DNA of 64,000 nt, from IMG/VR virus record IMGVR_UViG_3300045970_000794, positions 186,001 to 250,000 of that record, one strand, 5' to 3'. Below the pieces are notes generated by a model. That model did no database searches. It saw nothing but the letters and a program-made list of their open reading frames with translations, and was not told the origin of the DNA. Positions 643 to 62,074 of this stretch are shown piece by piece. Position 1 is the stretch's first letter. Every line of letters starts with the position of its first letter. The translations under genes were made by a program, and so were the position numbers.

Positions 643-724
643 AATATATTGTATTACTTTATAATAAATATACGAATATTTAAAAAATTAGTTGCATTCA
701 GATATTTATTTAAAAAATAAAATT

Positions 725-1894
725 ATGGCTGCAAGTGAAATTGAGAAAACACGCTTATTTAGACAAGTTAGACATCAACTAGGTGCTCCAATGCGTAAAA
801 TTGAGTTACCAGACGAAAATTTAGTAACTTTATTGGAATTATCTATTGAAGATTACGCTGAATATGTACATAATTGGCTAATAGATAGTCAATGGTCATC
901 ATTTATAGGTCAACCTATTGATACTTTAGATATGGCATTCGCATTAACAACTAGAACATTAGATTTTGAGACACAATTTACTTATGCTTACTCAAAACAA
1001 GTTGGTTTACAAGCTAGAGGTCCATGGGAACTCAAAAAAGATTATGTTGAGATAGAAGCTGGTAGACAAGTTTATGAAATTCCAGCTGGTCGTGAGGTAA
1101 ATCAAGTATTATGGTTAACCCCATCGGTAACTAATCGTGCATTATTTGCTAATTTTGGTGGTTTTGATAACGGTATTGGTGGTGGTTACGCTCAAACTGG
1201 TTTTGGAGTCGGTGGTGGTGGTACTGGTGCTGGTTCTGGTGGTATGGGTGGAAGAGGTGGATATTATATCGCACCAGCATTTGATGTTTTATTGACTGCG
1301 GCCGATATGAATCTTAAACATAGATTATTAAGAAGTGATTTAGTATATAAAATAACCGCTGGGCCTAATGGTACTAAGTTATTACATTTAATTAGCACAC
1401 CAGGTTCTAAAATGACATTCGGTATGGGTGGTCAAGGTGGAAGTATGGCTGGTTCTAGTTCTTTAGGTATTGCTGGATGTCACGTATGGTATCATTATTA
1501 CGATACTAATGGTGATGTTGATGCATGTAGAGCGGCTAATTTAGATATTATTACGATGCCGAATGAAGTACCATTAACTAGATTAGATTTTGATGTGTTA
1601 AATGAACCTACAAAAATATTAATTCGTCAAATATTAACAGCTAGAGCTAAAATAACCTTAGGAAGAACTAGGGGTAAGTTTGGTGGTGTTGTTGGTCCAC
1701 CAGAAGCTGAAAGAACTATGGATTGGGAAAGTTTATTAACTGAAGGTAATGAAGAATATGGTAAAATATTTGAAAGATTAGCTGCTAGGTTAGAGCAAAT
1801 GACTAATACTAAAATGTTAGAGCGAAAAGCTAATGAAGCTGAAAACTTAAATAAAACATTAGCTTATAGACCCTTAGGATTTTACGTTATTTAG
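725..1894 (+). CDS. Neck/head-completion protein (T4 gp13-like)
   Basis: RHQLGAPMRKIELPDE N-terminus and GRTRGKFGGV C-terminal motif typical of gp13-like neck proteins. ATG 725 preferred to TTG 692 because it follows the ATATTTAT motif at 702. Confidence 0.7.
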   Translation: MAASEIEKTRLFRQVRHQLGAPMRKIELPDENLVTLLELSIEDYAEYVHNWLIDSQWSSFIGQPIDTLDMAFALTTRTLDFETQFTYAYSKQVGLQARGPWELKKDYVEIEAGRQVYEIPAGREVNQVLWLTPSVTNRALFANFGGFDNGIGGGYAQTGFGVGGGGTGAGSGGMGGRGGYYIAPAFDVLLTAADMNLKHRLLRSDLVYKITAGPNGTKLLHLISTPGSKMTFGMGGQGGSMAGSSSLGIAGCHVWYHYYDTNGDVDACRAANLDIITMPNEVPLTRLDFDVLNEPTKILIRQILTARAKITLGRTRGKFGGVVGPPEAERTMDWESLLTEGNEEYGKIFERLAARLEQMTNTKMLERKANEAENLNKTLAYRPLGFYVI

Positions 1895-2791
1895 TAATTT
1901 TTTTTCTAATTTTTTAATTATATCTTCATTATACCTAATAATAATTAAAGGGATGCTATTAATATAACAGTATCTCTTTTTTATTTTATCTCTTTTTCTA
2001 ATTGATTTTAGATTATCTAATCCACCCCAATATTTAATTGACCTATAATGTTGTTCACCATTATATTCGATACAAACATTATAATCTGGTAAATAAAAAT
2101 CAAATGGTAACATTATTTTATCTTTACAACCATTAAATCTATGCTGTGGTAAATATTTAATATTATTTATTAATAAAAATTCTCTAATAATTTTTTCACC
2201 CTTTGATGATTTACACTTAGAACACCCTTGACCTTTTAAATGATTACTAGGGGTTTGCTCAAATTCACCATGAATTGAACATATAATTTTAACTTTATTA
2301 TGTGCATTAATATAAATTACATTAGAATAATCATATTTATTTGTGTGAATTTCTAAAGATTTAGTTATGAATTTATCATTTTTAAACCTTTTACTATCAC
2401 CAACTGCTTTCCAACCACATTTTTGACAACCATAACTCTCCAAATGCCATTTAGCTTTTTGTTTAAATTCACCATGTATTGGGCATATTATATCTAAAAC
2501 ACTATGTTTATTTATATAATTAATGTTAGTATAATCGTATTTATTACCATGTTTTTGTTTTGCTTTAATTATAAATTCTTCATTAGTTAATTTTGAGTTT
2601 ATTTTACATTTTGGACATCCACTATTACTTCTTAGATGATTTCTTGGTTCCATTAAAAACTCACCATGTATTGGACATATTATGATTATGTTTTCGTATT
2701 GTGTTATATAATTAGCTTTTGAATAATCATATTTATCACCATGTTTTTGTACTGCTCGTTTAATAAAAATTTCTGTAGTTATCATATTCAT
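1874..2791 (-). CDS. Free-standing endonuclease: three Zn-finger-like repeats (YDYS..IICPIHGEF..GCxKC) plus C-terminal PD-(D/E)xK-like (Vsr/DUF559-type) domain
   Basis: Repeats visible in translation; C-terminal LPFDFYLPDYNVCIEYNGEQHY...RDKIKKRYC...IPLIIIRY. Confidence 0.8.
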   Translation of the reverse strand: MNMITTEIFIKRAVQKHGDKYDYSKANYITQYENIIIICPIHGEFLMEPRNHLRSNSGCPKCKINSKLTNEEFIIKAKQKHGNKYDYTNINYINKHSVLDIICPIHGEFKQKAKWHLESYGCQKCGWKAVGDSKRFKNDKFITKSLEIHTNKYDYSNVIYINAHNKVKIICSIHGEFEQTPSNHLKGQGCSKCKSSKGEKIIREFLLINNIKYLPQHRFNGCKDKIMLPFDFYLPDYNVCIEYNGEQHYRSIKYWGGLDNLKSIRKRDKIKKRYCYINSIPLIIIRYNEDIIKKLEKKLLNNVKS

Positions 2792-2831
2792 TTTATTATA
2801 AATATATTGAAATTAATAAAAGAAATTTTAA

Positions 2832-2870
2832 ACTATGAAATATCGTCCTATGGGATTCTATGTAATATAA
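2832..2870 (+). repeat. Orphan second copy of the neck gene 3' end
   Basis: Reads TMKYRPMGFYVI* versus TLAYRPLGFYVI* at 1856..1894; followed directly by a terminator. Confidence 0.85.
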
Positions 2871-2871
2871 A

Positions 2872-2901
2872 AAAAGCGGGCTAATACCCGCTTTATTTTT
2901 T
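2872..2901. terminator. Intrinsic terminator, probably bidirectional
   Basis: aaaaGCGGG-ctaata-CCCGCtttattttt between convergent genes. Confidence 0.75.
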
Positions 2902-2902
2902 A

Positions 2903-5900
2903 CTAGAAATTCCATTCATCATCGTCTTCGTTAAGAGTTATCTCAGCAACTTCTTGTATTGCTTCGACAATGACCTTTTCCTCTTCGTTAATGGACTGAT
3001 TTGGTTCTACTGATAGTACTGATTCATTTAATACTTTTTGTTGTTCTAAATGTTTTAACCAAAAGTCATAAGGTTTTTTAAGTTCATCATCATTAAGAGT
3101 CTCGTAAAATTCAGCTCTAGTTATGGCTTCATCCTCGTATTTAAATATATCATCTAGCTTACCGATTTCCTCATCGTATTTTTTAGATAGGAATATTAAT
3201 TCACCTTCTTCGTTAACACTTAAATACGCTATATTTACGTAGTTATTAATAACATCTATCGCAACATCATAATCAGAAGCTAATAATTCATTAATATTTT
3301 CTAATTGGTTAGCTTCAAGTCGTTTAATTAAATCATCAATTTTTTTACGTTCGAAAATAAGGTCACCTTCTTTCATTTTAGCTACTCTATCTAAATAGTC
3401 AGCTTTAATTCCTTCCCAATCTTCTAGCGAAACACCAATATCTTCTAGGTTATTTGGTGTTTTATTTACTTTAAGCCAAAATTTAATTTCTTTATCTTCG
3501 AAATTCATTAAATCTTTTTCGTAGTCATCTTGGTCGATTGGTTCATCTGGAATACCAGATACAAGTATACATTCTTCTTCGGTGAATATTTGAGGCTCCG
3601 CTAATGTCATTTTTTTAGTCTTCCTATCGGTTTTAGTTTCAACAAAAATCTTATCACGAATTTCTTTTTTGAATACAACCAATAATGGGGTTATTCGATT
3701 ATTAAATGCTGTTAAATACTTAGCCACATTATATTCTTCTGTGGTTAAATTGGAATCACTTTCAATATCCTCAGTTGGAATCAATTTACAATTTAATTTA
3801 ACGACACCTTTTTCAGTTTTAATATCACCATGTGATTTTTTTTCACCAGTATTAACATAGTAGATTACATCACCTAATTCAACTTTTAAATTATGTAAAA
3901 TTGCTAATTCCATATGTGCTTGCTTAGGCATTGGTTTACCAGCTTTATTAGTTTTTTTACATTTTTTCTTGTATTCATCAATACTAATCTTAACTTTAGA
4001 TTTTGATGCAATTTTAATTAAAGGAATTGAATAACTATAAATCATATCGACATATTTTTGATATAACTCAATAAATTCACTACCTTTATTATCCAATAAT
4101 AATACAATTGCTTCATCTAAAAATTCTTCAATGTATGTTGGCATTTTCTTAGATTTGATAGTATTACCAACCAATTTAATCTTAGTTTTACCTTTTTTGA
4201 TGATTTTATTAGCGTAATTCTTTCTAGCGAAATTAATAGTTGATTCACCGATTTCATCAATATCCAATCCCATTCTACCAATCATGTAAGTATCATTGAA
4301 TTCAGCAACTACAGCTTTTACACCGATATATTCTTTATCTTTTTCATTGAATGAATGTTTTCCATTTGAAATATACGTTATATTATCAATATCCAGTGGT
4401 ATTTCAAAGTTAAAACCATCGGTATTTTTAAGATTAATTAATCCAATTCCACCAATAAAAGTCCCATCATCAGTTGATATGTCATAAACAAAATTATTAA
4501 TATCTTTATTAGAAATTATTTCATTTTTCCAAACTTCATCAGACTTTTTTAATGTTTTTTTAGTAAAACTAGATAAATTACGATTATTATTTTTTAATGA
4601 AAATGAAATAAAATTTTGTTTATCTTTTCTGGTTTTAATTTTATACTCAATATTTAAATTTTTCATTAATAAACCAATACCAGCCATAGCAACTTGAGAC
4701 TTCATACCAATATCTGAACAAGTATCTATAGTATTTCCATAACCATCAGATGCACACACACCTTCTAAAAAATATTTTTTAATATCATTATTAGAATTTA
4801 AAATAATATTAGGTATTTTTTTCTCCCTGTAAGAAGTGTAAAAGTTTTCACAGAAAAATGTTGCGAATGTTGCATTGTGAACAACTAAATTATAGACACT
4901 ACTAGATTTTAAGTGGTTTTTTATTTCAGATTTAATTTTAAATTTAGTTTCTAAAATTAATTTTAATTTCTCCAAAAATTCTAAATTTGAATTGGATATC
5001 TTCCAGTCACTTCGTTTACCTTTATTAATATGTATTTCACCAGTTTTTTTGGACCTATATTTTTGCGTTCTTTTTGAACAATTAGCTGAACCATCACCCA
5101 AGAAAAAACCATATAACCAAGCCTCATCACTTGATATGCTATTTATTGAGTTAAAATCATTTAAATCATTACAAACATCAATCTTATCACCTCTTTTTAA
5201 TTTTGATGGTTTTATTTGAATATTATTCTGAAACAATGAATGGTCTTCAGTTACATTAACTAACCTATCTTTAGTGGTTATTCGGTGAATTGTTTTTTCA
5301 GTTTCATGTCTAAAAACATATTTAATATTTTTCCAACCATTTACAGTTAAAACTTCATATGGTTTAGCTTCAAAATCACGTAATTTATGAGAATCAATAT
5401 AGTTTGAATTTTCATTAAATAAATCACAAATTGGTAATATATCTAACATTCCATTTTTATATCTAATATAAACTGGTGTATCATATGTAACTGAATCACC
5501 CACAAGTGGTATAAAACCATATTTTTCAACAAAGAACTTAACCATAAGTCTTAAATACATTCTACCTCTACATGTTGTTTCTTCAGCCAAATCCATTTGT
5601 GACCATGGGAATACATCTGGCGCACCATAAGAACCGAAGAATGAGTTAGCAAGTATTTTAAGTGGTAATTGTTTTCTATCATAGAAACTACCAGTCTTCG
5701 TATCACCAAGACCATAAGCTTCATTCATCAAAGCTTTGTATTTATCACGATAATCAACAATATAGGTTAATAAACCTTTCATAACACCACTGATATCAAT
5801 ATCAGAGAATATATTCCAAGTTAATTGAGTTTTTGGGTAAAGAGCTGCATAATCGAGTTTTGAATATTTACCAGCTTTACCAACTCTAAGTAATCTTGAT

Positions 5901-7267
5901 AAACCACCAGTAAAATCACGTTTCTTATCAAATTCTGGAATAGCCAAATCATTTTCATATGACCAAGCTAACATTATCAACTTCCAAATGGTTGCAGTAC
6001 CCATGGTAAGGGTACGCATAAATGATGTTGGTAAAATTTTAGATAATAAGAATGATGCTTGATTAAAAATGAAACCTACTTGTTCGGTTTCCCATAAATC
6101 ATCTAAAAGATATCGTTCAGCAATATATTGCCCTGTAACAATTTCATATTCATCTTTAAGTGGTTTATTTTCAGTTATTTTATACCAATCACCATTGACA
6201 TCATTAAATGCATACTCATTTACTTTATCGGACCAAATAGTACCAATCATTCTACCATCATTAATATAAACACGATTTGGTTTATTAATTTCGGAAAATT
6301 TAGTAATATATTTTAATCCAGCTTTTTTAATATCAGAATTAATCGCTTGAGCTCTACGAACTGAATGATAAATGTCGGCAATGTTATATCCCCACATGTA
6401 TGTTTGTTCATAATATTCAGTATCACTACCTAATTTTAATGTTGATTGTTTACGTTTAATTTTAACATTAGGGTTTAATGTTTTTACCATTTTAGTAATA
6501 TCAACATTTAATAATCTACATCTTTCAAAGATATAGTACCAGTCAAATGTTTCTGAATTATAACCTTCAATAATATCTGGCTTTAATGCATCAATAATAC
6601 CAAAAAATGTTTCTAATGCTTGAACTTCTCTACTTAATCTATTTGGACCATCTTCAATTGTTAATATTGTCTCCCACCCACGATTATTTTTAATACCTAT
6701 TTGATTAATATGTGTATTATGTGGGTCTAAACCAGTTGTTTCTAAGTCGAACTGAAGTCTATGCAAATCATTATAATCATCAAATCCCTTGAATAATCGT
6801 TTACCAGATTGAATCATATATTGCTCAATTGGTGGTAATGTCATGAAATTCTTATTACCATTTATCTCACAACCAGCATCTTTAAAGAAATTTAATAATT
6901 GAAGGTAATTTTTGCTTCCAGTGATAAGGTATTTATATCCAGCGGCTAATCGTTGTGGTTCAGTACCTTCATCATTTTTAGTTTTAAGTAATTTAACTTT
7001 AATTTCAGCTTTACGCATTTCATTCTTCAACTTACCTCTATTTCCACCGTATAAATCATCCAATGCGGCTTCTTTCATCCAAAGGAATGGCTTATACTTT
7101 TCTTTTTTGACTATTTTAGTTGAAGTACCATAACCATTTGGTTGGTTAATTATTACTGAAACAGTTTCATCGTAATAATTAGCTTCAATTGCTGTAATGT
7201 ATTTTTGTGGGTCGTGACCATCGAAAAATTGTTCAATAGCCTCAGGTGTAACTTGTTTTTGCTCCAT
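2903..7267 (-). CDS. polB: Family B DNA polymerase containing an intein
   Basis: ExoI FDLETTG, ExoII GYNSETFDW, motif A DYAALYP, motif B KILANSFFG, motif C VGD|TDG split by intein, RKNYA. Likely start MEQKQ at 7267 (ORF track starts 7306). Confidence 0.95.
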   Translation of the reverse strand: MEQKQVTPEAIEQFFDGHDPQKYITAIEANYYDETVSVIINQPNGYGTSTKIVKKEKYKPFLWMKEAALDDLYGGNRGKLKNEMRKAEIKVKLLKTKNDEGTEPQRLAAGYKYLITGSKNYLQLLNFFKDAGCEINGNKNFMTLPPIEQYMIQSGKRLFKGFDDYNDLHRLQFDLETTGLDPHNTHINQIGIKNNRGWETILTIEDGPNRLSREVQALETFFGIIDALKPDIIEGYNSETFDWYYIFERCRLLNVDITKMVKTLNPNVKIKRKQSTLKLGSDTEYYEQTYMWGYNIADIYHSVRRAQAINSDIKKAGLKYITKFSEINKPNRVYINDGRMIGTIWSDKVNEYAFNDVNGDWYKITENKPLKDEYEIVTGQYIAERYLLDDLWETEQVGFIFNQASFLLSKILPTSFMRTLTMGTATIWKLIMLAWSYENDLAIPEFDKKRDFTGGLSRLLRVGKAGKYSKLDYAALYPKTQLTWNIFSDIDISGVMKGLLTYIVDYRDKYKALMNEAYGLGDTKTGSFYDRKQLPLKILANSFFGSYGAPDVFPWSQMDLAEETTCRGRMYLRLMVKFFVEKYGFIPLVGDSVTYDTPVYIRYKNGMLDILPICDLFNENSNYIDSHKLRDFEAKPYEVLTVNGWKNIKYVFRHETEKTIHRITTKDRLVNVTEDHSLFQNNIQIKPSKLKRGDKIDVCNDLNDFNSINSISSDEAWLYGFFLGDGSANCSKRTQKYRSKKTGEIHINKGKRSDWKISNSNLEFLEKLKLILETKFKIKSEIKNHLKSSSVYNLVVHNATFATFFCENFYTSYREKKIPNIILNSNNDIKKYFLEGVCASDGYGNTIDTCSDIGMKSQVAMAGIGLLMKNLNIEYKIKTRKDKQNFISFSLKNNNRNLSSFTKKTLKKSDEVWKNEIISNKDINNFVYDISTDDGTFIGGIGLINLKNTDGFNFEIPLDIDNITYISNGKHSFNEKDKEYIGVKAVVAEFNDTYMIGRMGLDIDEIGESTINFARKNYANKIIKKGKTKIKLVGNTIKSKKMPTYIEEFLDEAIVLLLDNKGSEFIELYQKYVDMIYSYSIPLIKIASKSKVKISIDEYKKKCKKTNKAGKPMPKQAHMELAILHNLKVELGDVIYYVNTGEKKSHGDIKTEKGVVKLNCKLIPTEDIESDSNLTTEEYNVAKYLTAFNNRITPLLVVFKKEIRDKIFVETKTDRKTKKMTLAEPQIFTEEECILVSGIPDEPIDQDDYEKDLMNFEDKEIKFWLKVNKTPNNLEDIGVSLEDWEGIKADYLDRVAKMKEGDLIFERKKIDDLIKRLEANQLENINELLASDYDVAIDVINNYVNIAYLSVNEEGELIFLSKKYDEEIGKLDDIFKYEDEAITRAEFYETLNDDELKKPYDFWLKHLEQQKVLNESVLSVEPNQSINEEEKVIVEAIQEVAEITLNEDDDEWNF
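4424..5494 (-). mobile_element. Intein (357 aa) with LAGLIDADG homing endonuclease in polymerase motif C
   Basis: Starts SVTYDTPVY after VGD; block B VTEDHSL; WLYGFFLGDGS and FLEGVCASDGY; ends VYDIST...INLKN before T(+1)DG. Confidence 0.92.
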
Positions 7268-7346
7268 ATGTATATAAAAAAATTCAGAAATAATGTAGAA
7301 ATACAAAATAACTTAATTTTTTCGTAAAAAGCAATAAAAAACGTAA

Positions 7347-7385: not shown

Positions 7386-7422
7386 TAAAAACTTTATCTT
7401 TTTTATAAATTAGTTATATTTA

Positions 7423-7451
7423 TATTTGTGGGAACATTGTTCCCACAAATA
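7423..7451. promoter_or_regulatory. Perfect 14-bp inverted repeat, candidate operator
   Basis: TATTTGTGGGAACA-T-TGTTCCCACAAATA; overlaps ATATTTAT (7416) and TATATTTG (7421); ends 21 nt before ATG 7473. Confidence 0.65.
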
Positions 7452-8760: not shown

Positions 8761-9152
8761 CGATTTTTAATATCCGCATCCAAGACATGGATTGTTAAAG
8801 TATCTCTAATTGGTACTATCAGTGTTCCGATTACTTCCATATCATTTAATCCACCTAAAAATTCAATAGTGAATTGTCCACGATATGTTCCAGCTCTATT
8901 AGTATCTTTAGTTCTAAATGTATAGGTTACATAATATTCTTCAGTCATATCCAATGGAGTATCTAGTTTTAACTCACACCCAGCTGGTCGTTTTGCAACC
9001 TTAATTAAACCAGTATCAACATCAACCATACTGAAGTAAACGTTGGAGTTTTGTATTTGCTCGTGAAATGCTTTATAGTCATTTCTACCATCTTGAATTA
9101 ATTCCATCTTCAAAATATTTAATGTAGCACCTTTATTTATGAAAAAATCCAT
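8757..9152 (-). CDS. BppU-like baseplate/Ig-like virion protein
   Basis: MDFFINKGATLNILKMEL...YTFRTKDTNRAGTYRGQFTIEF..TLIVP pattern; end of the tail-fibre operon. Confidence 0.5.
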   Translation of the reverse strand: MDFFINKGATLNILKMELIQDGRNDYKAFHEQIQNSNVYFSMVDVDTGLIKVAKRPAGCELKLDTPLDMTEEYYVTYTFRTKDTNRAGTYRGQFTIEFLGGLNDMEVIGTLIVPIRDTLTIHVLDADIKNR

Positions 9153-9861: not shown

Positions 9862-9881
9862 ATGATTATAAATATAACACT

Positions 9882-11768: not shown

Positions 11769-11840
11769 TTTTTTTGTTTTTATATAAATATTAATAAAAT
11801 TAGATTACCACTAAATAATGTTGTGATATATTAATTAATA

Positions 11841-21843: not shown

Positions 21844-21902
21844 AATATATTTATTAATAAATATTCTCAATTCAAGGTATATTTATAGAGAAATGAATTA
21901 TT

Positions 21903-26533: not shown

Positions 26534-26564
26534 TTGACACTTGGTAATTTTTTGAGTATCTTTG
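26534..26564 (+). promoter_or_regulatory. Bacteroidota-type promoter
   Basis: TTG at 26534 and TATCTTTG at 26557-26564, upstream of 26593. Confidence 0.65.
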
Positions 26565-27159: not shown

Positions 27160-27197
27160 ACTTTAGTTTTTTCCAAAAAATCATATATTTATAATAT

Positions 27198-30690: not shown

Positions 30691-30691
30691 T

Positions 30692-31573: not shown

Positions 31574-31576
31574 AAT

Positions 31577-37940: not shown

Positions 37941-37941
37941 T

Positions 37942-38999: not shown

Positions 39000-39000
39000 T

Positions 39001-40896: not shown

Positions 40897-40982
40897 ATGT
40901 TTAAGTTTATTTATTATAAATATCTTCAAATTTATCAATAATTAATATTTACTTTAACTATAATTATGATTATTTTAATATT

Positions 40983-43872: not shown

Positions 43873-44667
43873 ATGGCAAAAAGAGGACGAAAAACTCAAG
43901 TAGGTATTTATTTTGGTCCTATAGAAGAAGAAGCTGTTAGTAGATATATGTCACTTGGTACTATGATTTATCATCCAGATTTTCCAGAGGATGAGAATAA
44001 AAAGATTTGGATTGGTACTGATGAAGAAGAAAAAGAACGGAATTCAATTTATAGTGAATTTTTAAAAAACCCACTAGATAAAATGATTGAATCAATCATT
44101 AGGCGATACAAATTATATCGAAAATCGATATCATTTGAAGAACTTCATTCCGATACTTTATCATTTTTAATGACAAAAGCTCACAAATTCGAAGATGCAC
44201 GAGGTAAAAAAGCATATTCTTACTATGGAACTATTTGTAAAAACTACATACTTGGATTATTAATTAAAGATGAAAAAACTATCAAACAAGTTACTTCGTA
44301 TGACGATATCTATGAAACTATCGAAGAACGAGAAGATTTATCATATGAAATTGACACACATGTAATAGATGCTAATTCTTTGATTAATGATATAACAACT
44401 GAAATTCGAAACGAACTTAGAGTTAATGAAACCAGTGAAAAGGTATATCTTAATGAAAACGAACGAAAAGTTGGTGAAGAATTAATTAATATTTTAGAGA
44501 ATTGGCAAACTGTTATTAATATTAGTGGTGGGAATAAATATAATAAAAATTCCATATTATCCTGTTTACGTGAGGGTACTCATTTAAATACTAAAGATAT
44601 TAGAAATGCAATGCGTAAGTATAAAAAAATGTATAGCCTAATTCTAGAGGAAAAATTAAACAATTGA
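43873..44667 (+). CDS. Phage sigma factor, gp55-like (region 2 recognisable)
   Basis: KMIESIIRRY..FEEL..KFEDARGKKAYSYYGTICKNYIL resembles sigma region 2 of T4 late-sigma homologues. Confidence 0.6.
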   Translation: MAKRGRKTQVGIYFGPIEEEAVSRYMSLGTMIYHPDFPEDENKKIWIGTDEEEKERNSIYSEFLKNPLDKMIESIIRRYKLYRKSISFEELHSDTLSFLMTKAHKFEDARGKKAYSYYGTICKNYILGLLIKDEKTIKQVTSYDDIYETIEEREDLSYEIDTHVIDANSLINDITTEIRNELRVNETSEKVYLNENERKVGEELINILENWQTVINISGGNKYNKNSILSCLREGTHLNTKDIRNAMRKYKKMYSLILEEKLNN

Positions 44668-44715
44668 TAGCTACTAGTTTTTTTTTCTGAGATATTTATA
44701 ATAAAAGAAAATACT

Positions 44716-48302: not shown

Positions 48303-48336
48303 TATTATTAGGATATTTATTAATAAATGATTTATT

Positions 48337-50950: not shown

Positions 50951-51001
50951 AACATTTACAATTTACAAACTACCCTTATATTTATATTTGATGATTAACC
51001 C

Positions 51002-52383: not shown

Positions 52384-52959
52384 TTGGTATATTTATATAG
52401 AAATGTATTAATTGTGAATTTATCAGATAAACTACATAATAAATTGACTCAATATCTATTCGAAAATAGTCAGTTTACCAATTGGGTTATGCCTTCCGAT
52501 GAAGATTTAGCTTTAGAGTATAATCTTGAATATGAAATGAAGCATTTAGGTTCATATATTCAAGATGTTATGGATGAATACGGTTACGATACTGGTGATA
52601 GTATTTTCCCTAATGCAATGTCTTTTGTTAAAGCAGCTAAAGCTGGACGAGTTATAATGGTTGATAAATCGTTAGATAATCTAATTGATTATCGTTCAAA
52701 TTGTAATTCTATTGAATGTTTAATTTCATTGATTAAAGGGTATCGTTCATATCCAAAATATAGGAATGAAGATACTATTAATGCAATGGCCCAAGGATTC
52801 GACCAAAATAAACCAATGAAATTACCAATCGTACTGAAATTTTCAGATGATGAATATAGGGTAATGGGTGGAAATACTAGAATGGACATGGCTTTTATTA
52901 AAGGCATTAACCCAAAAGTATTGGTGGTTGATTTAAGAAGATTTGCTAAGAAATTATAA
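52384..52959 (+). CDS. ParB/sulfiredoxin-like domain protein; start probably near 52414
   Basis: PIVLK..YRVMGGNTRMDMA. Confidence 0.55.
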   Translation: MVYLYRNVLIVNLSDKLHNKLTQYLFENSQFTNWVMPSDEDLALEYNLEYEMKHLGSYIQDVMDEYGYDTGDSIFPNAMSFVKAAKAGRVIMVDKSLDNLIDYRSNCNSIECLISLIKGYRSYPKYRNEDTINAMAQGFDQNKPMKLPIVLKFSDDEYRVMGGNTRMDMAFIKGINPKVLVVDLRRFAKKL

Positions 52960-53964: not shown

Positions 53965-53996
53965 TTTGCATTTTTAAAATAATTTTAGTATCTTTG
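53965..53996 (+). promoter_or_regulatory. Bacteroidota-type promoter of the Zn-finger nuclease gene
   Basis: TTTG-N20-TATCTTTG, 5 nt before ATG 54002. Confidence 0.75.
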
Positions 53997-55975: not shown

Positions 55976-56022
55976 ATACAAAGATACTAATAATAGTTTA
56001 TAAAGTCAAGTAATATTAACAA

Positions 56023-56071: not shown

Positions 56072-57859
56072 TTATCTCAACTCATTAATATTGAATGTAG
56101 GTACACCATCAACTCTTACGTGACCATAGAAACGGTTGTTCACAACTTTCTTAGCGTAACGTGTCATTATACCCTTAACAGGGGCAAAGTTGAATGGGTT
56201 GTACATTGTTGGAGTAAGTTGCAAAGGCACGTATGGTGCGTAGATGTAACCAGTATCCAATAATGATTTACCTTTATGACCGATAATCATTGAGTAGTAA
56301 GGAGCATAAGGGTCACGATACACTTGGTAACGTCCACTTAATGAACCAATTCTTTCAATACCCATGTTGTATTGGTCTTGTTCTGGACTTGCGTCAGAAA
56401 CGTGGAAATATTCTAAATCGTCAAATATAGCACTGATTTCAGAAGATACAACGATGAAGTTAGCACCACCTCTAAGTGTAGATTTATGGATTTGTGCTGA
56501 AATTTGGTTAACTTTAGTTAATAAAGTTTGATTCCAGTCTTTTTGAGTGTAAGGACTTGCAGCTGTAGAAGCTTTTCTCCAACCTTGGTAATCCCATCTC
56601 ATTTGCCATGCAGCAGCTTTACGTAAATCACGAAGGATTTCACGGTCAATTTCAGCAGCTACTTGTTCAGACAACATAGCAGTCAATTCAGCTTCAGCAT
56701 CGATGTTGTGGAATGCACTAACGTCTTGAGCCAATTCTGGTGACCATGTTGCACGTAATTTTCTTTCTTCAACAGATACAACAACTTCGTCAAGTTTGAA
56801 AGAAATTTCAGCAAGTTCAGTTTCTAATTCAAGAGTTGCATAAGTTGCATATGATACTGTAAATGCAGTTGCACCAGTTGCAGCATAAGTACTAGAACTT
56901 ACAGCTCCAACATAACCATCATATGTAGATGTACCGTTAGATGATACTGGGTGACTTAAATCAAGGTCTAAATACATAATACCTTCAGCGTCACAAATAT
57001 CAGTATATTCAACAATACCTTTACCGTATTTTTGAGTTACAATTCTAAATGGAACTTCAGCATTTTGTGCAATGATTACTTTACCATCTGGGTCAGTAAT
57101 TGCAGCGTTTGCACTAACAATTTTAAGACCAGCTAAGAAGCTTTCAGTATCCATTGGATGTCCATCAGGTCCGTTTAATCTACCAGCACCACTACCAGTG
57201 AAACCAGTTACTTTAAGGATTACGTTTCTGATTGAACCATCAACTGCGTAAGTTGGGGTTGTTGCATTAGCCCAAACACCATTAGCATTTAATGTAACAG
57301 GTTGAGTCAATGTCATTGCATTGATAGTTATTGTACCTTTTGAGTTGTCAAATAAACCATCATTGTAATATAAATCGTAAAGTGATTTACTTCTGAAAGT
57401 TGTTTCTAAACAACCATCAATAACACAACTTGGAAGTTGTCCAACAGCCATACCAGTGTGAGCTGAATATGTTGCACCGTCAATCCATGGGTCACCATAA
57501 GTTCCAGTTGAATTATTTGTTCTGTAAGAAGTTTGTGGTACGAAGAAGAACAATTTACCAATTGGCATGTTCAACGCTTGTACAGACACGATATCGTTAG
57601 CTAAAAGCTTAGAGAATACTCTTCTTACGATAGGGAATACTACTGTTTCGAAAGAACCAGAAGAATCCGCTGTAGTGTTTTCGGTTAATAAAGTACTAGC
57701 TTGGTTTTCATAAAGCTGAGCAATATTTTCCTTAACGTGGCCTTTAAGACCTTCTAAGAATCCAAGAGATTCCCATTTTTCTTGAGTCATTTTACGGATA
57801 ACTTTCATGTGGTTTAATCCAATGTTACCTACTTGACCTGATGTTAATAAATGTCCCAT
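56072..57859 (-). CDS. Major capsid protein (T4 gp23-like)
   Basis: PIVRRVF..VSVQ..P.GKLF; RKLRATWSPELAQD..DAEAEL..EIDREI; YAPYVPL..GIMTRY. Confidence 0.97.
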   Translation of the reverse strand: MGHLLTSGQVGNIGLNHMKVIRKMTQEKWESLGFLEGLKGHVKENIAQLYENQASTLLTENTTADSSGSFETVVFPIVRRVFSKLLANDIVSVQALNMPIGKLFFFVPQTSYRTNNSTGTYGDPWIDGATYSAHTGMAVGQLPSCVIDGCLETTFRSKSLYDLYYNDGLFDNSKGTITINAMTLTQPVTLNANGVWANATTPTYAVDGSIRNVILKVTGFTGSGAGRLNGPDGHPMDTESFLAGLKIVSANAAITDPDGKVIIAQNAEVPFRIVTQKYGKGIVEYTDICDAEGIMYLDLDLSHPVSSNGTSTYDGYVGAVSSSTYAATGATAFTVSYATYATLELETELAEISFKLDEVVVSVEERKLRATWSPELAQDVSAFHNIDAEAELTAMLSEQVAAEIDREILRDLRKAAAWQMRWDYQGWRKASTAASPYTQKDWNQTLLTKVNQISAQIHKSTLRGGANFIVVSSEISAIFDDLEYFHVSDASPEQDQYNMGIERIGSLSGRYQVYRDPYAPYYSMIIGHKGKSLLDTGYIYAPYVPLQLTPTMYNPFNFAPVKGIMTRYAKKVVNNRFYGHVRVDGVPTFNINELR

Positions 57860-57894
57860 AATTTAATATGTTTAATTTTTAATTTTTATTATTA

Positions 57895-59409
57895 TTATCT
57901 TGTTTCAACTCTATTGATTAAGTCAATTATTCTTTTTGTTGATTGGTCAACATATGCTGTTGATTCACTCAATTGACTTGCTCCAGAGCCTTGAACCTTA
58001 GTTGTTTTATCAACGATAGATTCGGTTATTGTTTTCTTGCTACCTAATTCGTTAGCAATTGTTTTGTAAAGCCTTTTAGATTCTTTCAATGAAGTTACTT
58101 CGCTATCGAATCTCTTCATGATGTCTTCTTTTTCCACCTTAGTAGTACTGTGTTCAGTAACCAATTTAACTACGTATGTTAAATTAGAGTTGTATACTAC
58201 GGCTTCAGCTAACATATCTCTAAATTTGCCTAAGTTAGCTTTGAATTCTTCTCTCTCTTGGCGAAGTGCTTTAACTTCAGTCAATAGAGCATTATATCTT
58301 TTTGTAACTTCTTCAGTAACTAATTTTTTAGCTGATGCTACTTTGGATTCAGCAGTTGTTCCAGCAGCTTTTCTTGCTGGTTCGTGACGTTGTGGTTGAT
58401 TTTGGCCACCAGCTTTTCTGCCTTGTGCGTATGTCAATCTTTCGCCTTCTTCCATAGTTTCTGGTTCAACTTCTTCAGTTTCCATTACATGTTCTGCGTG
58501 TCCTGTTTTAGAACCGTTAGGGTCTTTTTCAGTAAATCCACCAGTTAAATTGTCGCCTTTAATAGTGTCTGATTTTTCACCTTTTTGACCTTCAATGTTT
58601 CCGCTTGGTAATTTTCCACCACCAACTTCATCACTCTTGTCATGACCATCTTTTCTTGGCTTTCCAGTAGATGCAATATCTCTACCAATGTTTTCCATTT
58701 CATGAAGTTCTATTTCGTAAACTACACTTTCACCTTTTAATTCATCGTCATCGTCACCTTCAGCTTTTTCCTCAGCTTCTTCACCTGGAGTTTCGCCAGC
58801 TTCATGTTCTGGGGTTTCGTCTTTAGCTTCGTCACCTAGGCTAAATTCGTATTCTGGTTCGTTTGACTCTTCATCACCAATGCCTAATTCTGGAGTTTCA
58901 ATTGATTCTTCAGAACCGATACCAGCTTCAGTAGGTTCACCACCGCCAAGTTTAACAACATATTCGTTGCCACTTTGAGGGTCTTTAATTTTAACTTCAT
59001 TGTTTGACACAATTTCGATTTCGTCTTCACCACTAAGTTTTTTGAATACTGAAATAACTTCATCATCAGATGCAGTAGTTAAATCTAATGTATCCATGCC
59101 TCCCATTTCTGGTTCCATTTCTGGTTCCATTTCTGGTTCCATTTCTGGTGTTTCGGCTGACTCTGGATTTTCATCATCCATTGGAAGAGCTGGAAGGTTT
59201 TCGCCGCCCATTTCGTCATCGGTGTCTAATTTTGGAGTGTTGACATCTTCTTCATCATAATCTGCTTCACTAAGCGATTCTTTCACAACAGCATTAATTT
59301 CTTCATGCATAGTAGCACGTAGTATTTCTTTCGTGTTTGCTTTCAAGACAGCTTGAATTGATTCAATATCAATTAATGCTTCGTCTATTAATTTTTTCTT
59401 TTCAGCCAT
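57895..59409 (-). CDS. Prohead scaffolding/core protein
   Basis: Very acidic, coiled-coil C-terminus, located between protease and capsid genes. Confidence 0.75.
   Translation of the reverse strand: MAEKKKLIDEALIDIESIQAVLKANTKEILRATMHEEINAVVKESLSEADYDEEDVNTPKLDTDDEMGGENLPALPMDDENPESAETPEMEPEMEPEMEPEMGGMDTLDLTTASDDEVISVFKKLSGEDEIEIVSNNEVKIKDPQSGNEYVVKLGGGEPTEAGIGSEESIETPELGIGDEESNEPEYEFSLGDEAKDETPEHEAGETPGEEAEEKAEGDDDDELKGESVVYEIELHEMENIGRDIASTGKPRKDGHDKSDEVGGGKLPSGNIEGQKGEKSDTIKGDNLTGGFTEKDPNGSKTGHAEHVMETEEVEPETMEEGERLTYAQGRKAGGQNQPQRHEPARKAAGTTAESKVASAKKLVTEEVTKRYNALLTEVKALRQEREEFKANLGKFRDMLAEAVVYNSNLTYVVKLVTEHSTTKVEKEDIMKRFDSEVTSLKESKRLYKTIANELGSKKTITESIVDKTTKVQGSGASQLSESTAYVDQSTKRIIDLINRVETR
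59104..59149. repeat. 12-bp tandem repeat encoding PEME
   Basis: (catttctggttc)x3 plus partial copy. Confidence 0.8.
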
Positions 59410-59566
59410 TTCAAACTAATTTAATTATAAGTTTATTTCTGTAATTAATAAATATGTGTTATTTTTAGAAAGTATAAATTGATTATCAATAAATGCACAC
59501 ATTTTTTAATCTTATTGTTTGGTTTTATTTAAAAACCTTTTAATTTTAGGTAAAAATCATTGTTTA

Positions 59567-60268
59567 TTACAATAAAAATTTATCTAAAAAATCATTTAAA
59601 TTTTCATTTATTATTTTACTACCATTAATTTTTGATTCCATGAATGGTGATGCTTTTTCTCTATTTCTGAATATCCAAGAACCTGGTGTACTAGGACTAG
59701 TAACAATATCCCAACAAATTATTTCAAAATCATCTTGTACGATAAATCTACCATTAACTTCTTCCAATGAACCAACACCTCTTGATGAAACACCAATCAT
59801 AATACCTTTTCTTAGTAAATTAGCAACCATATCACCTTGACATGAAATAATACCAAAATTGATAAATCCTGGTGACATAATAATTTCCATTTCACCTACC
59901 AAGGTATTACCTTCCCACCACATTTTGGTTATATTGTGTGCGATGCGTTCAACTGAAATAATAGAAGATTCTGGATGGTCTGATTCACCAATAGCTCTAA
60001 CGTCTCTGATTAGCTCTTGATAATTATTTGCTTCACGTTTTAATATTTGTTCGGAATAAATTCGTCCATTACGGTTTTCAATACCATATTTTTGTAATAC
60101 AACGAATACTTTTAATGGTTCTTCAATTACGAATTGTCTGGATTCTAGTTTCTGAATTTCAGTTATGAATTTTTTGTTTCGAGAATCCCTAGGGTCAATA
60201 TACCCATCATTCTCGATTAAATATCCATAACCAGATTCACCAGCTTTTAATATTTTAATATCTGACAT
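59567..60268 (-). CDS. Prohead core protease (T4 gp21-like)
   Basis: NRNGRIY, GESDHP, GVSSRGVGS, DIVTSPS. Confidence 0.93.
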   Translation of the reverse strand: MSDIKILKAGESGYGYLIENDGYIDPRDSRNKKFITEIQKLESRQFVIEEPLKVFVVLQKYGIENRNGRIYSEQILKREANNYQELIRDVRAIGESDHPESSIISVERIAHNITKMWWEGNTLVGEMEIIMSPGFINFGIISCQGDMVANLLRKGIMIGVSSRGVGSLEEVNGRFIVQDDFEIICWDIVTSPSTPGSWIFRNREKASPFMESKINGSKIINENLNDFLDKFLL

Positions 60269-60306
60269 ATTCTAACATTTTATTATAAATATGTCCAATA
60301 AATCAA

Positions 60307-60335
60307 AAAGCCCTAGATGTATATCTAGGGCCTTT
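60307..60335 (-). terminator. Intrinsic terminator
   Basis: GCCCTAGAT-gtat-ATCTAGGGC. Confidence 0.7.
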
Positions 60336-60353
60336 AGTTATAGTTAAGTTTAA

Positions 60354-60788
60354 TTATTTTTTACTTTTATAAAAGCTAAAAAACTCATTAGAATCCAATA
60401 TTTCATCAACAATTAATTTCGTAATATTAGTTAATTCAGTATTCAATTCATCCGAATCAATACTCAATTCATTTTTCTGGTATAATGTTATTTCACAATT
60501 CATAAAACTACGCTTACCGTATTGAATCCCAGATTCTCGCATATCCAAATCAACTAATATTCGGTCATGGATGAATTGCTGTTTATTTATTTTAGAATAT
60601 AATTTTTGCTTTATTTGCTTATTGATTTGACTTATTACCCTATCATATGAAACATCACCTTCAAGCTTTGGTTCACCCCACGCTGACATGTTAATATAGA
60701 TTGATTTTGGGTTTTTAGTATCAACAGTACCAGAAACGATACAGTAATTGTTGGAAACATTAATTTTATTTTCTTTACCTCTTTTCAT
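60354..60788 (-). CDS. Hypothetical protein
   Basis: 144-aa ORF. Confidence 0.6.
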   Translation of the reverse strand: MKRGKENKINVSNNYCIVSGTVDTKNPKSIYINMSAWGEPKLEGDVSYDRVISQINKQIKQKLYSKINKQQFIHDRILVDLDMRESGIQYGKRSFMNCEITLYQKNELSIDSDELNTELTNITKLIVDEILDSNEFFSFYKSKK

Positions 60789-60859
60789 AATAAAAAATCC
60801 TCACTCTTTTCACCAATTATAGTGAAAAAAATGAGGATTGTCAAGTATTATTTAATATA

Positions 60860-61234
60860 TTATTTAAATATGTTCTGTGCGAATATTGCGATTGCCATAA
60901 GTGCTTGGATAACAATCCAAATCATTAGTGCCTGAGTTCTAAAAGTTTTTAATCTATCAATATCACTTATTTTTTCTTTTAATTGTGTAGGGGAAACGAT
61001 TTCTTCCATTCTTCGTTTCCAATTAGTCAATTCTTTGAGTTCACTAGGTGATGTTACTGCATCAAAATTTGATTTCCACTCATTAATAGTTTTAATCTCA
61101 AATTCGTGAGTTCCAATAACATTAAGTCTTTCCTCAATATGCCCTAGTCGCTCACTAAAGCTCACTTGATTTTCAGCGATTGTATTTAATCTATGAAGTA
61201 TTAATTCTAAATTAATTTTTTGTTCATCTGCCAT
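60860..61234 (-). CDS. Coiled-coil protein with C-terminal transmembrane helix
   Basis: Ends ALMIWIVIQALMAIAIFAQNIFK. Confidence 0.55.
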   Translation of the reverse strand: MADEQKINLELILHRLNTIAENQVSFSERLGHIEERLNVIGTHEFEIKTINEWKSNFDAVTSPSELKELTNWKRRMEEIVSPTQLKEKISDIDRLKTFRTQALMIWIVIQALMAIAIFAQNIFK

Positions 61235-61249
61235 AACATACTTTTGTTT

Positions 61250-62032
61250 TTAATTATTCGTTAAATCTGTTTTTAAAACAATAAGTTTATTCATATTTTC
61301 GTTGTAATTCGATGAATTATAAGTCATAGTTAGTAATTTATCTTTAACTTGTGATAATTTTTCTTTTACATTAGAATCATTGTTAATTAATTTTGCGTCA
61401 ATTAAATCAACGCATTCAGTTACAATATCTTTTTGTGATTGTTCTTTAACCACTTCATCAGTTTCAATTAAAGTTTTAAGTAATATTCGTTCATTTTCAT
61501 TTAAATCACTATATTTCTCATTAAATTTCTTAATGGCAATAGTAGCGATAGCGTTCGTTGGGATTAAATTTTCTTTAATCGTTTCTTTTGGTTTATTACT
61601 TTTAATGTAATTAGTTATGTTGTTATAAGACTCTGTAATAGTTTCAACGTATAAAGGATTGTTACTCATGAAAATTATTTTAGTAATATCTTCATGTAAT
61701 TTAGTCATTTTATCGTCATAAGGTTTATCTAACCTTGTTTTATATTTACCTAATTTTTCAGCTAAATTTTCATTAGCTTTTTGAATGTCAGTTTTTTTGA
61801 AATCTCTTAAATATTGAACGTTAAGTTTTGTAAAATTAATAGCATTATTTTCATTGATATCAGATTTATCTTCTAAATTGGTATAAACCAAGAATTCAGT
61901 TCTTAAAATTTTATCTTTTTTAATAGCCTTAACATATTCACTAAATATCGCTTTCTTAGTCTCATCTTTTTTAATGATGGACTCAATTAATAGGTCATAA
62001 AAAGCATTTTTTATTTTACCAAAATTCTGCAT
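61250..62032 (-). CDS. Hypothetical head-module protein
   Basis: 260-aa helical ORF downstream of portal. Confidence 0.6.
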   Translation of the reverse strand: MQNFGKIKNAFYDLLIESIIKKDETKKAIFSEYVKAIKKDKILRTEFLVYTNLEDKSDINENNAINFTKLNVQYLRDFKKTDIQKANENLAEKLGKYKTRLDKPYDDKMTKLHEDITKIIFMSNNPLYVETITESYNNITNYIKSNKPKETIKENLIPTNAIATIAIKKFNEKYSDLNENERILLKTLIETDEVVKEQSQKDIVTECVDLIDAKLINNDSNVKEKLSQVKDKLLTMTYNSSNYNENMNKLIVLKTDLTNN

Positions 62033-62074
62033 AACATTTATTTATTAATAAATATTGTAATTACTCGAAAGAGC

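What the first reader, a model, noticed from the sequence alone, without database searches (positions are those of the whole stretch)
664..62055. Recurrent ATATTTAT motif upstream of genes, overlapping the reverse complement of the T4 late promoter
ATATTTAT lies about 5-40 nt before likely starts in gene orientation: plus strand 702, 21879, 27185, 44692, 48313, 52389; minus strand 664, 2798, 9868, 11784, 21857, 40916, 59448, 60285, 62048. Two more sit further from starts (7416, 50978). It mostly precedes structural and nuclease genes and resembles the host TAnnTTTG element with an altered end. A gp55-like sigma factor (43873) is a candidate reader. T4 uses TATAAATA, the opposite orientation.
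Basis: partly seen in the sequence, partly recalled or inferred. Interest (0 to 1): 0.6.

Follow-up and report, generated by a model that had tools for sequence, protein, structure and literature searches.

The report
Conserved TATTTAT promoter box in phage
A short DNA word, (A/C/G)TATTTAT, sits at a fixed distance in front of about a hundred genes of this 362-kb T4-like jumbo phage of Bacteroidota and its many relatives, and is most likely a phage-specific promoter read by a diverged, so far unannotated sigma-like protein.

Summary
All 17 sites exist. In the 60 nt before genes, ATATTTAT occurs 15 times in gene orientation in the window (dinucleotide shuffles 1.5±1.2) and 69 times in the genome (11.3±3.3; antisense 15). 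Motif-to-ATG spacing peaks at 12-18 nt and 4-6 nt.

It is the top upstream 8-mer in 160 related metagenomic loci, and the TATTTAT core tops upstream words in the structural-gene region of cultured Flavobacterium phage immuto. Orthologous intergenic regions keep it while their flanks diverge.

A second class, TTG-N19-TAnnTTTG (the host Bacteroidota type), precedes auxiliary-metabolism genes. TATTTAT precedes capsid, protease, sheath and fibre genes, and also a helicase/RNR unit and homing-endonuclease-like genes.

Best reading: a -10-like box of a phage-specific, post-early promoter class, with transcription starting about 5-7 nt downstream. This gives leaderless or roughly 10-nt-leader mRNAs.

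The candidate reader (43873-44667) is sigma-like and weakly gp55-related. It co-occurs with the motif everywhere examined, including in immuto, where no canonical sigma domain was detected.

"Opposite orientation to T4" is not required: in the same orientation TATTTATA matches TATAAATA at 6 of 8 positions. This is a new variant of a known kind.

The parts
664..671 (-). TATTTAT box (M1) before a 59-aa ORF (463-642, ribbon-helix-helix-like by eye)
   Evidence: spacing 21 nt
702..709 (+). M1 box before gene 725-1894 (389 aa, no Pfam match); divergent partner of site 664
   Evidence: spacing 15
2798..2805 (-). M1 box before gene 1874-2791 (DUF723/zinc-finger, homing-endonuclease-like); near-leaderless
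   Evidence: spacing 6
7416..7423 (+). M1 box followed at once by a perfect 12-bp hairpin (7424-7450), then gene 7473-8045
   Evidence: hairpin -16.2 kcal/mol; spacing 49; function uncertain
9868..9875 (-). M1 box before gene 9133-9861 (242 aa); near-leaderless
   Evidence: spacing 6
11784..11791 (-). M1 box before fibre-like gene 9882-11768 (YadA-head repeats)
   Evidence: spacing 15
21857..21864 (-). M1 box heading the operon of five large fibre-like genes, 21843 down to 11841 (includes YadA-head repeats and a Peptidase_S74 chaperone domain). It forms a perfect palindrome with the copy at 21847.
   Evidence: spacing 13
21879..21886 (+). M1 box before gene 21903-22532, which heads a plus-strand gene block; divergent from 21857
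   Evidence: spacing 16
27185..27192 (+). M1 box before GIY-YIG/NUMOD1 homing-endonuclease-like gene 27198-28130; near-leaderless
   Evidence: spacing 5
40916..40923 (-). M1 box before 74-aa gene 40672-40896
   Evidence: spacing 19
43873..44667 (+). Sigma-like protein (264 aa), the candidate reader: sigma region-2-like N-terminal half plus an extra C-terminal helical domain
   Evidence: Pfam Sigma70_r2 E 6e-4, below cut-off. Only hit of T4 gp55 in the genome, E 0.006. Family profile against gp55 family profile: E 2.5e-5, probability 75%. AlphaFold2 model pLDDT 75; the top 13 VIA second-look matches are all sigma factors, Z 6-7.
44692..44699 (+). M1 box directly after the sigma-like gene, before gene 44716-45108 (130 aa). 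This arrangement is kept in 76 of 77 relatives and in phage immuto.
   Evidence: spacing 16
48313..48320 (+). M1 box before gene 48337-49737 (466 aa), which heads a four-gene unit
   Evidence: spacing 16
50978..50985 (+). M1 box 112 nt before gene 51098-51967; a structured leader is predicted; function uncertain
52389..52396 (+). M1 box before ORF ending at 52959, probably starting at GTG 52414
   Evidence: spacing 17; the leader is nearly identical to that of genome site 73441
59448..59455 (-). M1 box before gene 57895-59409 (504 aa) and the major capsid gene 56072-57859, which has no box of its own
   Evidence: spacing 38; kept in 15 of 21 orthologous regions
60285..60292 (-). M1 box before prohead core protease gene 59567-60268, just after a terminator-like hairpin
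   Evidence: (41 of 57 orthologous regions); spacing 16
62048..62055 (-). M1 box before head-module gene 61250-62032
   Evidence: 32 of 35 orthologous regions keep it while flanks diverge; spacing 15
26534..26564 (+). Host-type promoter (TTGAC-N18-TATCTTTG) before gene 26593-27159; an example of the second class (M2)
53966..53996 (+). Host-type promoter (M2) before gene 54002-54601
55979..56009 (-). Host-type promoter (M2) before gene 55292-55975. In several relatives the orthologous position carries ATATTTAT instead.
60816..60844 (-). Classical sigma-70-type TTGACA-N17-TATAAT before gene 60354-60788; relatives keep TTGAC-N17-TATACT (a third class)

Best explanation
(A/C/G)TATTTAT(A/T) is the -10-like core box of a phage-specific promoter class. 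This class is used by a large clade of T4-like (gp23/gp20-type) phages of Bacteroidota, the 362-kb phage here among them.

Inferred mechanism: host core RNA polymerase carries a phage-encoded sigma-like protein (window 43873-44667, distantly related to T4 gp55). It opens DNA at this box and starts about 5-7 nt downstream, at a conserved AAA. The result is either leaderless mRNAs (ATG 4-6 nt after the box) or mRNAs with leaders of roughly 10 nt (ATG 12-18 nt after the box).

Genes for auxiliary metabolism and host takeover instead carry host-type TTG-N19-TAnnTTTG promoters. The two motifs therefore most likely mark an early (host sigma) programme and a post-early (phage sigma) programme.

Shown: the motif, its orientation, spacing and conservation; the split of gene functions between the two classes; the sigma-like fold of the protein and its co-occurrence with the motif.

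Inferred: promoter function, the start site, the timing, and which protein reads the box.
For: Enrichment, strand bias and spacing.

Conservation:
- It is the top 8-mer upstream of genes in 80 loci anchored on the capsid gene (320 forward, 14.7 expected, 43 antisense).
- It is also the top 8-mer in 80 loci anchored on the sigma-like gene (97 forward, 5.9 expected, 4 antisense).
- Orthologous footprints are kept while flanks diverge: 32/35, 41/57 and 76/77 regions.
- The same flank pattern recurs in 313 independent sites: a T-tract 13-17 nt upstream and AAA 4-6 nt downstream.

Promoter-like behaviour:
- In the leaderless class the A of ATG falls exactly on the conserved AAA positions.
- The box sits at the heads of gene units, not before tightly packed internal genes: 1 of 168 genes with a gap under 20 nt, against 63 of 234 with a gap of 40 nt or more.
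- It often follows terminator-like hairpins.
- Inside genes, the antisense-oriented motif is depleted: 42 against 62±4.4 in synonymous-codon shuffles.

Gene content:
- M1 units hold the capsid operon, prohead protease, tail sheath, fibres and portal.
- M2 units hold NAMPT, a NUDIX protein, DNA and RNA ligases, an RNase R-like protein and DnaJ.

Reader:
- The protein has a sigma-like fold and a profile link to gp55.
- A homologue is found in every complete relative tested.
- In Flavobacterium phage immuto, [AC]TATTTAT precedes the terminase, portal, sheath and virion genes. A homologue is present there (gp118), and no Sigma70_r2 match appears even at E<=1.

T4 register: gp55 flips out A-12, A-9 and A-8 (PMC7892883). 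TATTTATA keeps A-12 and A-8, and Y97, the residue that stacks on A-12, aligns with the near-invariant Y117.
Against: - No transcript data exist. No RNA run holds this phage, so the promoter function, the start site and the timing are all inferred.
- The phage encodes three canonical sigma-70-family proteins, and relatives carry one to three. Any of these, or a host sigma, could read the box.
- Homology to gp55 is modest. Pairwise comparison and a shallow profile were not significant. The PDB gp55 chain scores only E 1.2.
- No gp45-type clamp, gp33, gp44 or gp62 homologue was detected, so the T4 activation mechanism cannot be assumed.
- The box also precedes replication genes, which does not fit a strictly 'late' class.
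- A T-tract at about -30 is not a feature of T4 late promoters.
- The terminase gene of this phage has no exact box.
Confidence: 0.6

Rival explanations
1. The box is a promoter element, but it is read by something other than the gp55-like protein. Candidates are one of the three canonical phage sigma-70-type factors (genome 103388-104227, 339943-340818, 342813-343409), or host sigma A or an alternative host sigma, possibly redirected by a phage factor as in T4 middle promoters.
For: Three bona fide sigma genes with regions 2 and 4 are present. Relatives keep at least one sigma of about 275 aa. The T-tract 13 nt upstream of the box sits where the MotA box sits in T4 middle promoters (own knowledge), which suggests a second contact. 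The box shares AT.TTT with the host TAnnTTTG. At one orthologous position, ATATTTAT and TATCTTTG replace each other.
Against: In phage immuto no Sigma70_r2 match was found even at E<=1, yet it uses the same box before virion genes. Host-type promoters form a clearly separate class with different spacing and a different last base. A third motif, TTGAC-N17-TATAnT, better fits canonical region 2/region 4 sigmas. The position that would be A-11 in the host register varies among A, C and G.
Confidence: 0.27
2. The motif is not a core promoter. It would instead be an operator for a DNA-binding regulator, or an RNA-level signal in the 5' leader (a translation enhancer or processing site in SD-less Bacteroidota mRNAs).
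For: The spacing to the ATG is tight. The surroundings are A/U-rich, which favours translation in Flavobacterium (PMC6847099). The motif is partly palindromic with the following ATAAA, and is a perfect palindrome at 21847-21864.
Against: The spacing is bimodal, with a class only 4-6 nt from the ATG. The exact 7-mer is conserved, rather than general AU-richness. The motif is absent before internal genes of operons. It sits directly after terminator-like hairpins. Antisense copies are depleted inside genes. The spacer to the downstream ATAAA varies (1 or 2 nt), which does not fit a dimeric operator.
Confidence: 0.1
3. Chance or compositional artefact of an AT-rich genome.
For: The raw window count is only mildly above shuffles, and some hits are coding repeats.
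Against: Dinucleotide-matched shuffles, strand asymmetry, the spacing peak and conservation in 160 related loci and a cultured phage all argue against chance.
Confidence: 0.01

Closest known systems
Bacteriophage T4 late promoters (TATAAATA) read by gp55, with gp33 and the gp45 sliding clamp
   Same: An 8-bp box made only of A and T, about one helical turn upstream of the inferred start, tightly adhered to, with no -35 hexamer. It occurs on both strands, some 50-100 copies per genome, before virion genes of a phage with gp23-type capsid and gp20-type portal. A small, diverged sigma region-2 protein is the candidate reader. The box matches T4's at 6 of 8 positions in the same orientation and keeps the adenines at -12 and -8.
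   Different: The central two bases are TT instead of AA; equivalently, the box is the exact reverse complement. A T-tract lies at about -30. Leaders are very short or absent. The box also precedes some replication genes. The candidate reader is 264 aa with an extra C-terminal domain. No gp45, gp33, gp44 or gp62 homologues were detectable.
Bacteroidota primary-sigma promoters (-33 TTTG / -7 TAnnTTTG; PMC6847099)
   Same: The same host phylum is inferred. The core AT.TTT is shared. Distance to the start codon is similar in the near-leaderless cases. This class exists in the same phage genome.
   Different: The final G is replaced by A-T. The first T is not conserved and the key A is variable in relatives. 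The upstream element is 13 nt away, not about 19. The gene sets are different.
T4 middle promoters (MotA box at -30 plus a -10 element; sigma appropriation by AsiA/MotA)
   Same: The geometry is bipartite: an upstream element 12-13 bp before the -10-like box, T-rich like the GCTT core of the MotA box. Replication genes are among the targets.
   Different: No MotA or AsiA homologues were sought or found. The upstream element is only a weak T-tract (0.3-0.4 bits per position). The -10-like box differs from the host's own. This comparison rests on my own knowledge of T4, not on a test made here.

Membership tests
T4-type late promoter | Box sequence TATAAATA in the direction of transcription | tested here: not met
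   TATAAATA in forward orientation occurs 10 times with no spacing peak. TATTTATA occurs 55 times with a peak at 12-19 nt. The two match at 6 of 8 positions.
T4-type late promoter | No conserved -35 element | tested here: met
   No hexamer appears at -35. There is only a weak T-tract 13-17 nt upstream of the box.
T4-type late promoter | Precedes late (virion) genes, on either strand | tested here: met
   The box precedes the capsid operon, prohead protease, sheath, fibres and the portal unit, and in phage immuto the terminase, portal and sheath genes. It also precedes helicase/RNR and SNF2 genes.
T4-type late promoter | Transcription starts about 6-7 nt downstream of the box, late in infection | not testable with these tools
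   No RNA run holds the phage. Indirect support: the conserved AAA and the A of leaderless ATGs lie 4-6 nt after the box.
T4-type late promoter | Dependence on gp55, gp33 and the gp45 clamp | tested here: inconclusive
   A gp55-related sigma-like gene is present. No gp45 Pfam match and no phmmer hit for gp33, gp44, gp45 or gp62. Divergence could hide them.
Bacteroidota sigma-A promoter (-33/-7) | TAnnTTTG box with TTG about 19 nt upstream | tested here: not met
   The box ends in AT, not G. The first T is not conserved. The upstream T-tract is at 13 nt. A separate class in the same genome does meet this feature.
gp55 protein family (for ORF 43873-44667) | Sequence homology to gp55 | tested here: inconclusive
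   T4 gp55 finds only this ORF in the genome, E 0.006. A shallow profile gives E 0.057. A deeper profile gives E 2.5e-5, probability 75%, over 118 columns. The PDB gp55 chain scores E 1.2, against SigA chains at 0.05.
gp55 protein family (for ORF 43873-44667) | Sigma region-2 fold | tested here: met
   AlphaFold2 model with pLDDT 75. Nine of the top eleven wide-search matches and all of the top thirteen second-look matches are sigma factors, Z 6-7 over residues about 15-140. By the tool's own caution, these Z values are modest.
gp55 protein family (for ORF 43873-44667) | About 185 aa, no region 4, C-terminal clamp-binding motif | tested here: not met
   The protein is 264 aa with an extra helical C-terminal domain (residues 165-264) that weakly resembles sigma region 4 (Z about 5). 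No LDFL-type C-terminus is present.

The most novel reading that the evidence does not exclude
A very large, unannotated family of gp55-derived sigma-like proteins directs transcription in T4-like phages of Bacteroidota. The family has over 1300 clusters at 50% identity and is labelled 'hypothetical' even in a cultured Flavobacterium phage. In this reading the protein has re-tuned the -10/-9 reading from AA to TT, giving a box that mirrors T4's. It has also gained a C-terminal DNA-contacting domain that reads the -30 T-tract, so that late transcription no longer needs the sliding clamp and gp33. Many of its mRNAs are leaderless.
Probability: 0.3. Interest if true: 0.7.

Novelty: new variant of a known kind. 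Interest (0 to 1): 0.55.

Why it matters
It gives a concrete promoter rule for a large group of freshwater and marine T4-like phages of Bacteroidota, jumbo phages included. Nothing about their transcription has been described in the literature I could search.

With the rule, transcription units and early versus post-early gene sets can be predicted directly from sequence. This matters because most of these genes have no annotation: PHROGs returned nothing for ten proteins.

It also assigns a testable function to a widespread 'hypothetical' protein family.

Finally, it offers a natural experiment on how gp55-type sigma factors change specificity. A cultured system, phage immuto on Flavobacterium sp. 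LMO8, is available for the test.

Tried and rejected
- PHROGs on ten window proteins: no hits.
- phmmer of the sigma-like protein, and of its shallow profile, against PDB: no hits.
- Foldseek against PDB: nothing below E 0.2.
- Megablast of 12 kb against cultured phages: no relative.
- Search for RNA sequencing runs: only three DNA metagenomes, so no start-site mapping was possible and read laying was not used.
- tRNA and Rfam scans of the window, to see whether the distant sites 7416 and 50978 precede RNA genes: nothing.
- Iterative PWM refinement seeded on exact sites stayed locked on the exact core and was abandoned in favour of single-mismatch counting.
- T4 gp33, gp32, gp44, gp45, gp46, gp47, gp59, gp62, regA, rpbA, dsbA and RNase H by phmmer against all 432 predicted proteins: no hits.
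- gp45 Pfam families in the genome: none.
- Terminator-like hairpins are not more frequent before M1 than before other promoters, so that argument is only anecdotal.
- The 484-kb uncultured phage LR756508 (capsid 43% identical) has a distant homologue of the sigma-like protein but no TATTTAT enrichment near its capsid gene. The motif is therefore clade-specific, not universal.
- The host-register alignment (box = TAnnTTTG variant) was considered and set aside, for the reasons given above.
- Gene calls are from my own crude ORF/codon-usage caller, so some starts are uncertain.
- No complex prediction was run.

Full report
**Context**

The window is bases 186001-250000 of a single 362,102-bp contig. 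The contig is 30% G+C and has a 127-bp terminal overlap. IMG/VR classes it as complete, with direct terminal repeats.

Pfam identifies the following in the window:
- a gp23-type major capsid protein (56072-57859, E 1e-70);
- a T4-type portal (62075 onward, E 7e-75);
- a prohead core protease (59567-60268);
- a family-B DNA polymerase with a LAGLIDADG insert (2903-7306);
- several fibre-like proteins with YadA-head repeats.

A tail sheath and a T4-type terminase lie elsewhere in the genome. This is therefore a T4-like jumbo phage. Its nearest cultured relative by capsid protein (40% identity) is Flavobacterium phage vB_FspM_immuto. The genome carries canonical Bacteroidota promoters (see below), so a Bacteroidota host is inferred.

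All 17 coordinates are correct. The bare count in the window (37 against 25.6±4.8) is not impressive. Seven of the hits are codons of a repeated DKYDYSK-type peptide in two DUF723-like genes at 54002-55318.

The picture changes once gene orientation is taken into account. I called 432 genes with a simple ORF/codon-usage procedure.
- In the 60 nt before starts, ATATTTAT occurs 69 times in gene orientation. Dinucleotide-preserving shuffles of those same segments give 11.3±3.3, and the antisense count is 15 (binomial p=2e-9).
- In the window alone the figures are 15 against 1.5±1.2.
- The distance from motif end to ATG peaks sharply at 13-19 nt, with a second small class at 4-6 nt.
- An unbiased scan of all 8-mers puts TATTTATA and ATATTTAT first.
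- Counting single-base variants shows that TATTTAT is almost invariant and only the leading A is free.

**A second, independent motif**

The same scan recovers TATCTTTG(CA) (36 against 2.2 expected; 3 antisense). Aligned, these sites read TTG-N19-TAnnTTTG with an A-rich stretch further upstream. This is the published primary-sigma promoter of Bacteroidota (PMC6847099). The phage therefore has host-type promoters as a separate class (M2). It follows that the TATTTAT box (M1) is not simply the host consensus.

**Conservation**

- Eighty IMG/VR loci around capsid genes 56-77% identical to this one (1.17 Mb) again give ATATTTAT as the top upstream 8-mer: 320 forward, 14.7 expected, 43 antisense.
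- Eighty further loci around homologues of the sigma-like gene (43-56% identical, 0.8 Mb) give the same result: 97 forward, 5.9 expected, 4 antisense.
- Orthologous intergenic regions keep the box while the flanks have diverged. It is present before 32 of 35 orthologues of gene 61250-62032, whose proteins are 26-46% identical. It is present before 41 of 57 prohead protease genes, often right after a terminator-like hairpin. It lies directly after 76 of 77 sigma-like genes.
- Across 313 non-identical sites the flanks show a T-tract 13-17 nt upstream of the box and AAA 4-6 nt downstream. The same pattern holds in this genome.
- In cultured phage immuto, [AC]TATTTAT precedes the terminase, portal, tail sheath, a virion structural protein and other genes of the structural region.

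**What it most likely is**

Several features fit a core promoter element rather than an operator or an RNA signal.
- The box occurs at the heads of gene units. It precedes 63 of 234 genes whose upstream gap is 40 nt or more, but only 1 of 168 with a gap under 20 nt.
- Divergent gene pairs carry two boxes facing outward (664/702 and 21857/21879).
- In the short-spacing class the A of the ATG falls exactly on the conserved AAA positions. The same orthologous gene switches between the 4-nt and the roughly 15-nt arrangement in different lineages. This is what a fixed start site 5-7 nt after the box would produce: leaderless mRNAs in the first case and leaders of roughly 10 nt in the second.
- Inside genes, antisense-oriented copies are depleted relative to synonymous-codon shuffles (42 against 62±4.4), while sense copies are not clearly depleted (40 against 48±4.9).

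**Gene sets**

Units headed by M1 include:
- the capsid operon, prohead protease, the portal unit, tail sheath and fibre operons, and a giant SprB-repeat protein;
- a DnaB-like helicase with a class II RNR, and an SNF2 helicase;
- GIY-YIG and DUF723 homing-endonuclease-like genes.

Units headed by M2 include NAMPT, a NUDIX/cytidylyltransferase-like protein, an HD/AAA kinase-like protein, DNA ligase, RNA ligase, an RNase R-like protein, DnaJ and an OmpA-family protein. One M2 unit also contains an ECF-like sigma gene.

No recognised head or tail gene sits in an M2 unit (one M2 gene has an ice-binding-like domain of unknown role). The split looks like early (host sigma) against post-early (phage-specific). 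'Late' in the strict T4 sense is not shown.

**Relation to T4**

The T4 late box TATAAATA occupies -13 to -6. gp55 flips out A-12, A-9 and A-8 of the non-template strand (PMC7892883; PMC2988020). However, because the T4 box is nearly palindromic, the two also agree at 6 of 8 positions in the same orientation. They differ only at -10 and -9.

In that register the invariant A's of the box are A-12 and A-8, and the start falls on the conserved AAA. The alternative register, box = TAnnTTTG with a changed end, puts the key A-11 on the one position that varies (A/C/G) in relatives. The T4 consensus itself is not used here: 10 forward copies with no spacing peak.

**The candidate reader**

ORF 43873-44667 (264 aa) has only a sub-threshold Sigma70_r2 match and no PHROG.
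- T4 gp55 searched against all predicted proteins of the phage finds only this ORF (E 0.006).
- The family is large: 3698 word-search hits, and 1317 clusters at 50% identity by full profile search.
- A shallow profile is not significantly similar to gp55. A deeper one is moderately so (E 2.5e-5, probability 75%, 118 columns). Against PDB sequences it touches SigA region 2 (E 0.05) and gp55 (E 1.2).
- The AlphaFold2 model (pLDDT 75) matches sigma factors almost exclusively among its best structural neighbours. The Z scores are only 6-7.
- In the alignment, gp55 R57, F86 and Y97 correspond to R78, F106 and Y117. H95 corresponds to Y115 and T99 to G119. This is a hint, from a weak alignment, that the -12 pocket is kept and the -9 pocket is changed.

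The genome encodes three canonical sigma-70-family proteins outside the window: 279 and 291 aa with regions 1.2, 2 and 4 (the 291-aa one also region 3), and a 198-aa ECF-like one. Five related records each carry one to three.

A third motif, TTGAC-N17-TATA(A/C)T, precedes gene 60354-60788 and its orthologues. It would suit such sigmas.

The best discriminating evidence comes from phage immuto. It uses the same box, encodes a homologue of the gp55-like protein (gp118, annotated as hypothetical), keeps the box directly after that gene, and shows no Sigma70_r2 match even at E<=1.

No gp45-type clamp, gp33 or clamp loader could be found. The clamp-dependent activation of T4 therefore cannot be carried over.

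**Limits**

No transcript data exist for this phage. Gene starts come from my own caller. Function, start site, timing and reader are all inferences.

Noticed in passing
genome 103388-104227, 339943-340818, 342813-343409 (outside the window): The phage encodes three canonical sigma-70-family proteins. Two have regions 1.2, 2 and 4 (one of them also region 3) and one is ECF-like. These are in addition to the gp55-like protein. Five related records carry one to three.
   Followed up: partly
window 26534-26564 (+), 53966-53996 (+), 55979-56009 (-), and about 60 sites genome-wide: Canonical Bacteroidota TTG-N19-TAnnTTTG promoters form a separate class. They lie before auxiliary-metabolism genes and clusters of small genes (for example genome 293-301 kb).
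   Followed up: yes
window 60816-60844 (-): A classical TTGACA-N17-TATAAT promoter-like site lies before gene 60354-60788. Orthologues in relatives keep TTGAC-N17-TATACT. It is possibly the target of the phage's canonical sigmas.
   Followed up: partly
window 44716-45108 (+): A 130-aa basic/acidic coiled-coil-like protein gene always follows the sigma-like gene and always has its own TATTTAT box (76 of 77 relatives, and phage immuto gp117). It could be a partner of the sigma-like protein. It shows no similarity to T4 gp33.
   Followed up: partly
window 54002-55318 (+): Two adjacent genes encode repeated DKYDYSK-type (DUF723-like) units of about 200 bp. Their codons create seven reverse-complement copies of the motif that have nothing to do with promoters.
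   Followed up: yes
window 7424-7450 (+): A perfect 12-bp hairpin (-16.2 kcal/mol) starts immediately after the box at 7416, in the divergent region between the DNA polymerase gene and gene 7473-8045.
   Followed up: no
window 2903-7306 (-): The family-B DNA polymerase gene carries a LAGLIDADG domain (residues about 729-818), suggesting an intein or inserted homing endonuclease. Neither the M1 nor the M2 motif is seen upstream of it.
   Followed up: no
window 463-642 (-): A 59-aa ORF with a ribbon-helix-helix-like N-terminus lies behind the box at 664. ORF lists with an 80-aa cut-off miss it.
   Followed up: no
window 29044-40669 (+): A long plus-strand block of tightly packed genes begins with a large multi-domain glycosyltransferase. 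It has almost no M1 or M2 boxes inside.
   Followed up: no
whole genome: No gp45-type sliding clamp, clamp loader, gp32, gp33 or gp59 homologue was detectable with T4 proteins or with the two gp45 Pfam families, despite T4-type head genes. A DnaB-like helicase and a class II RNR are present.
   Followed up: partly
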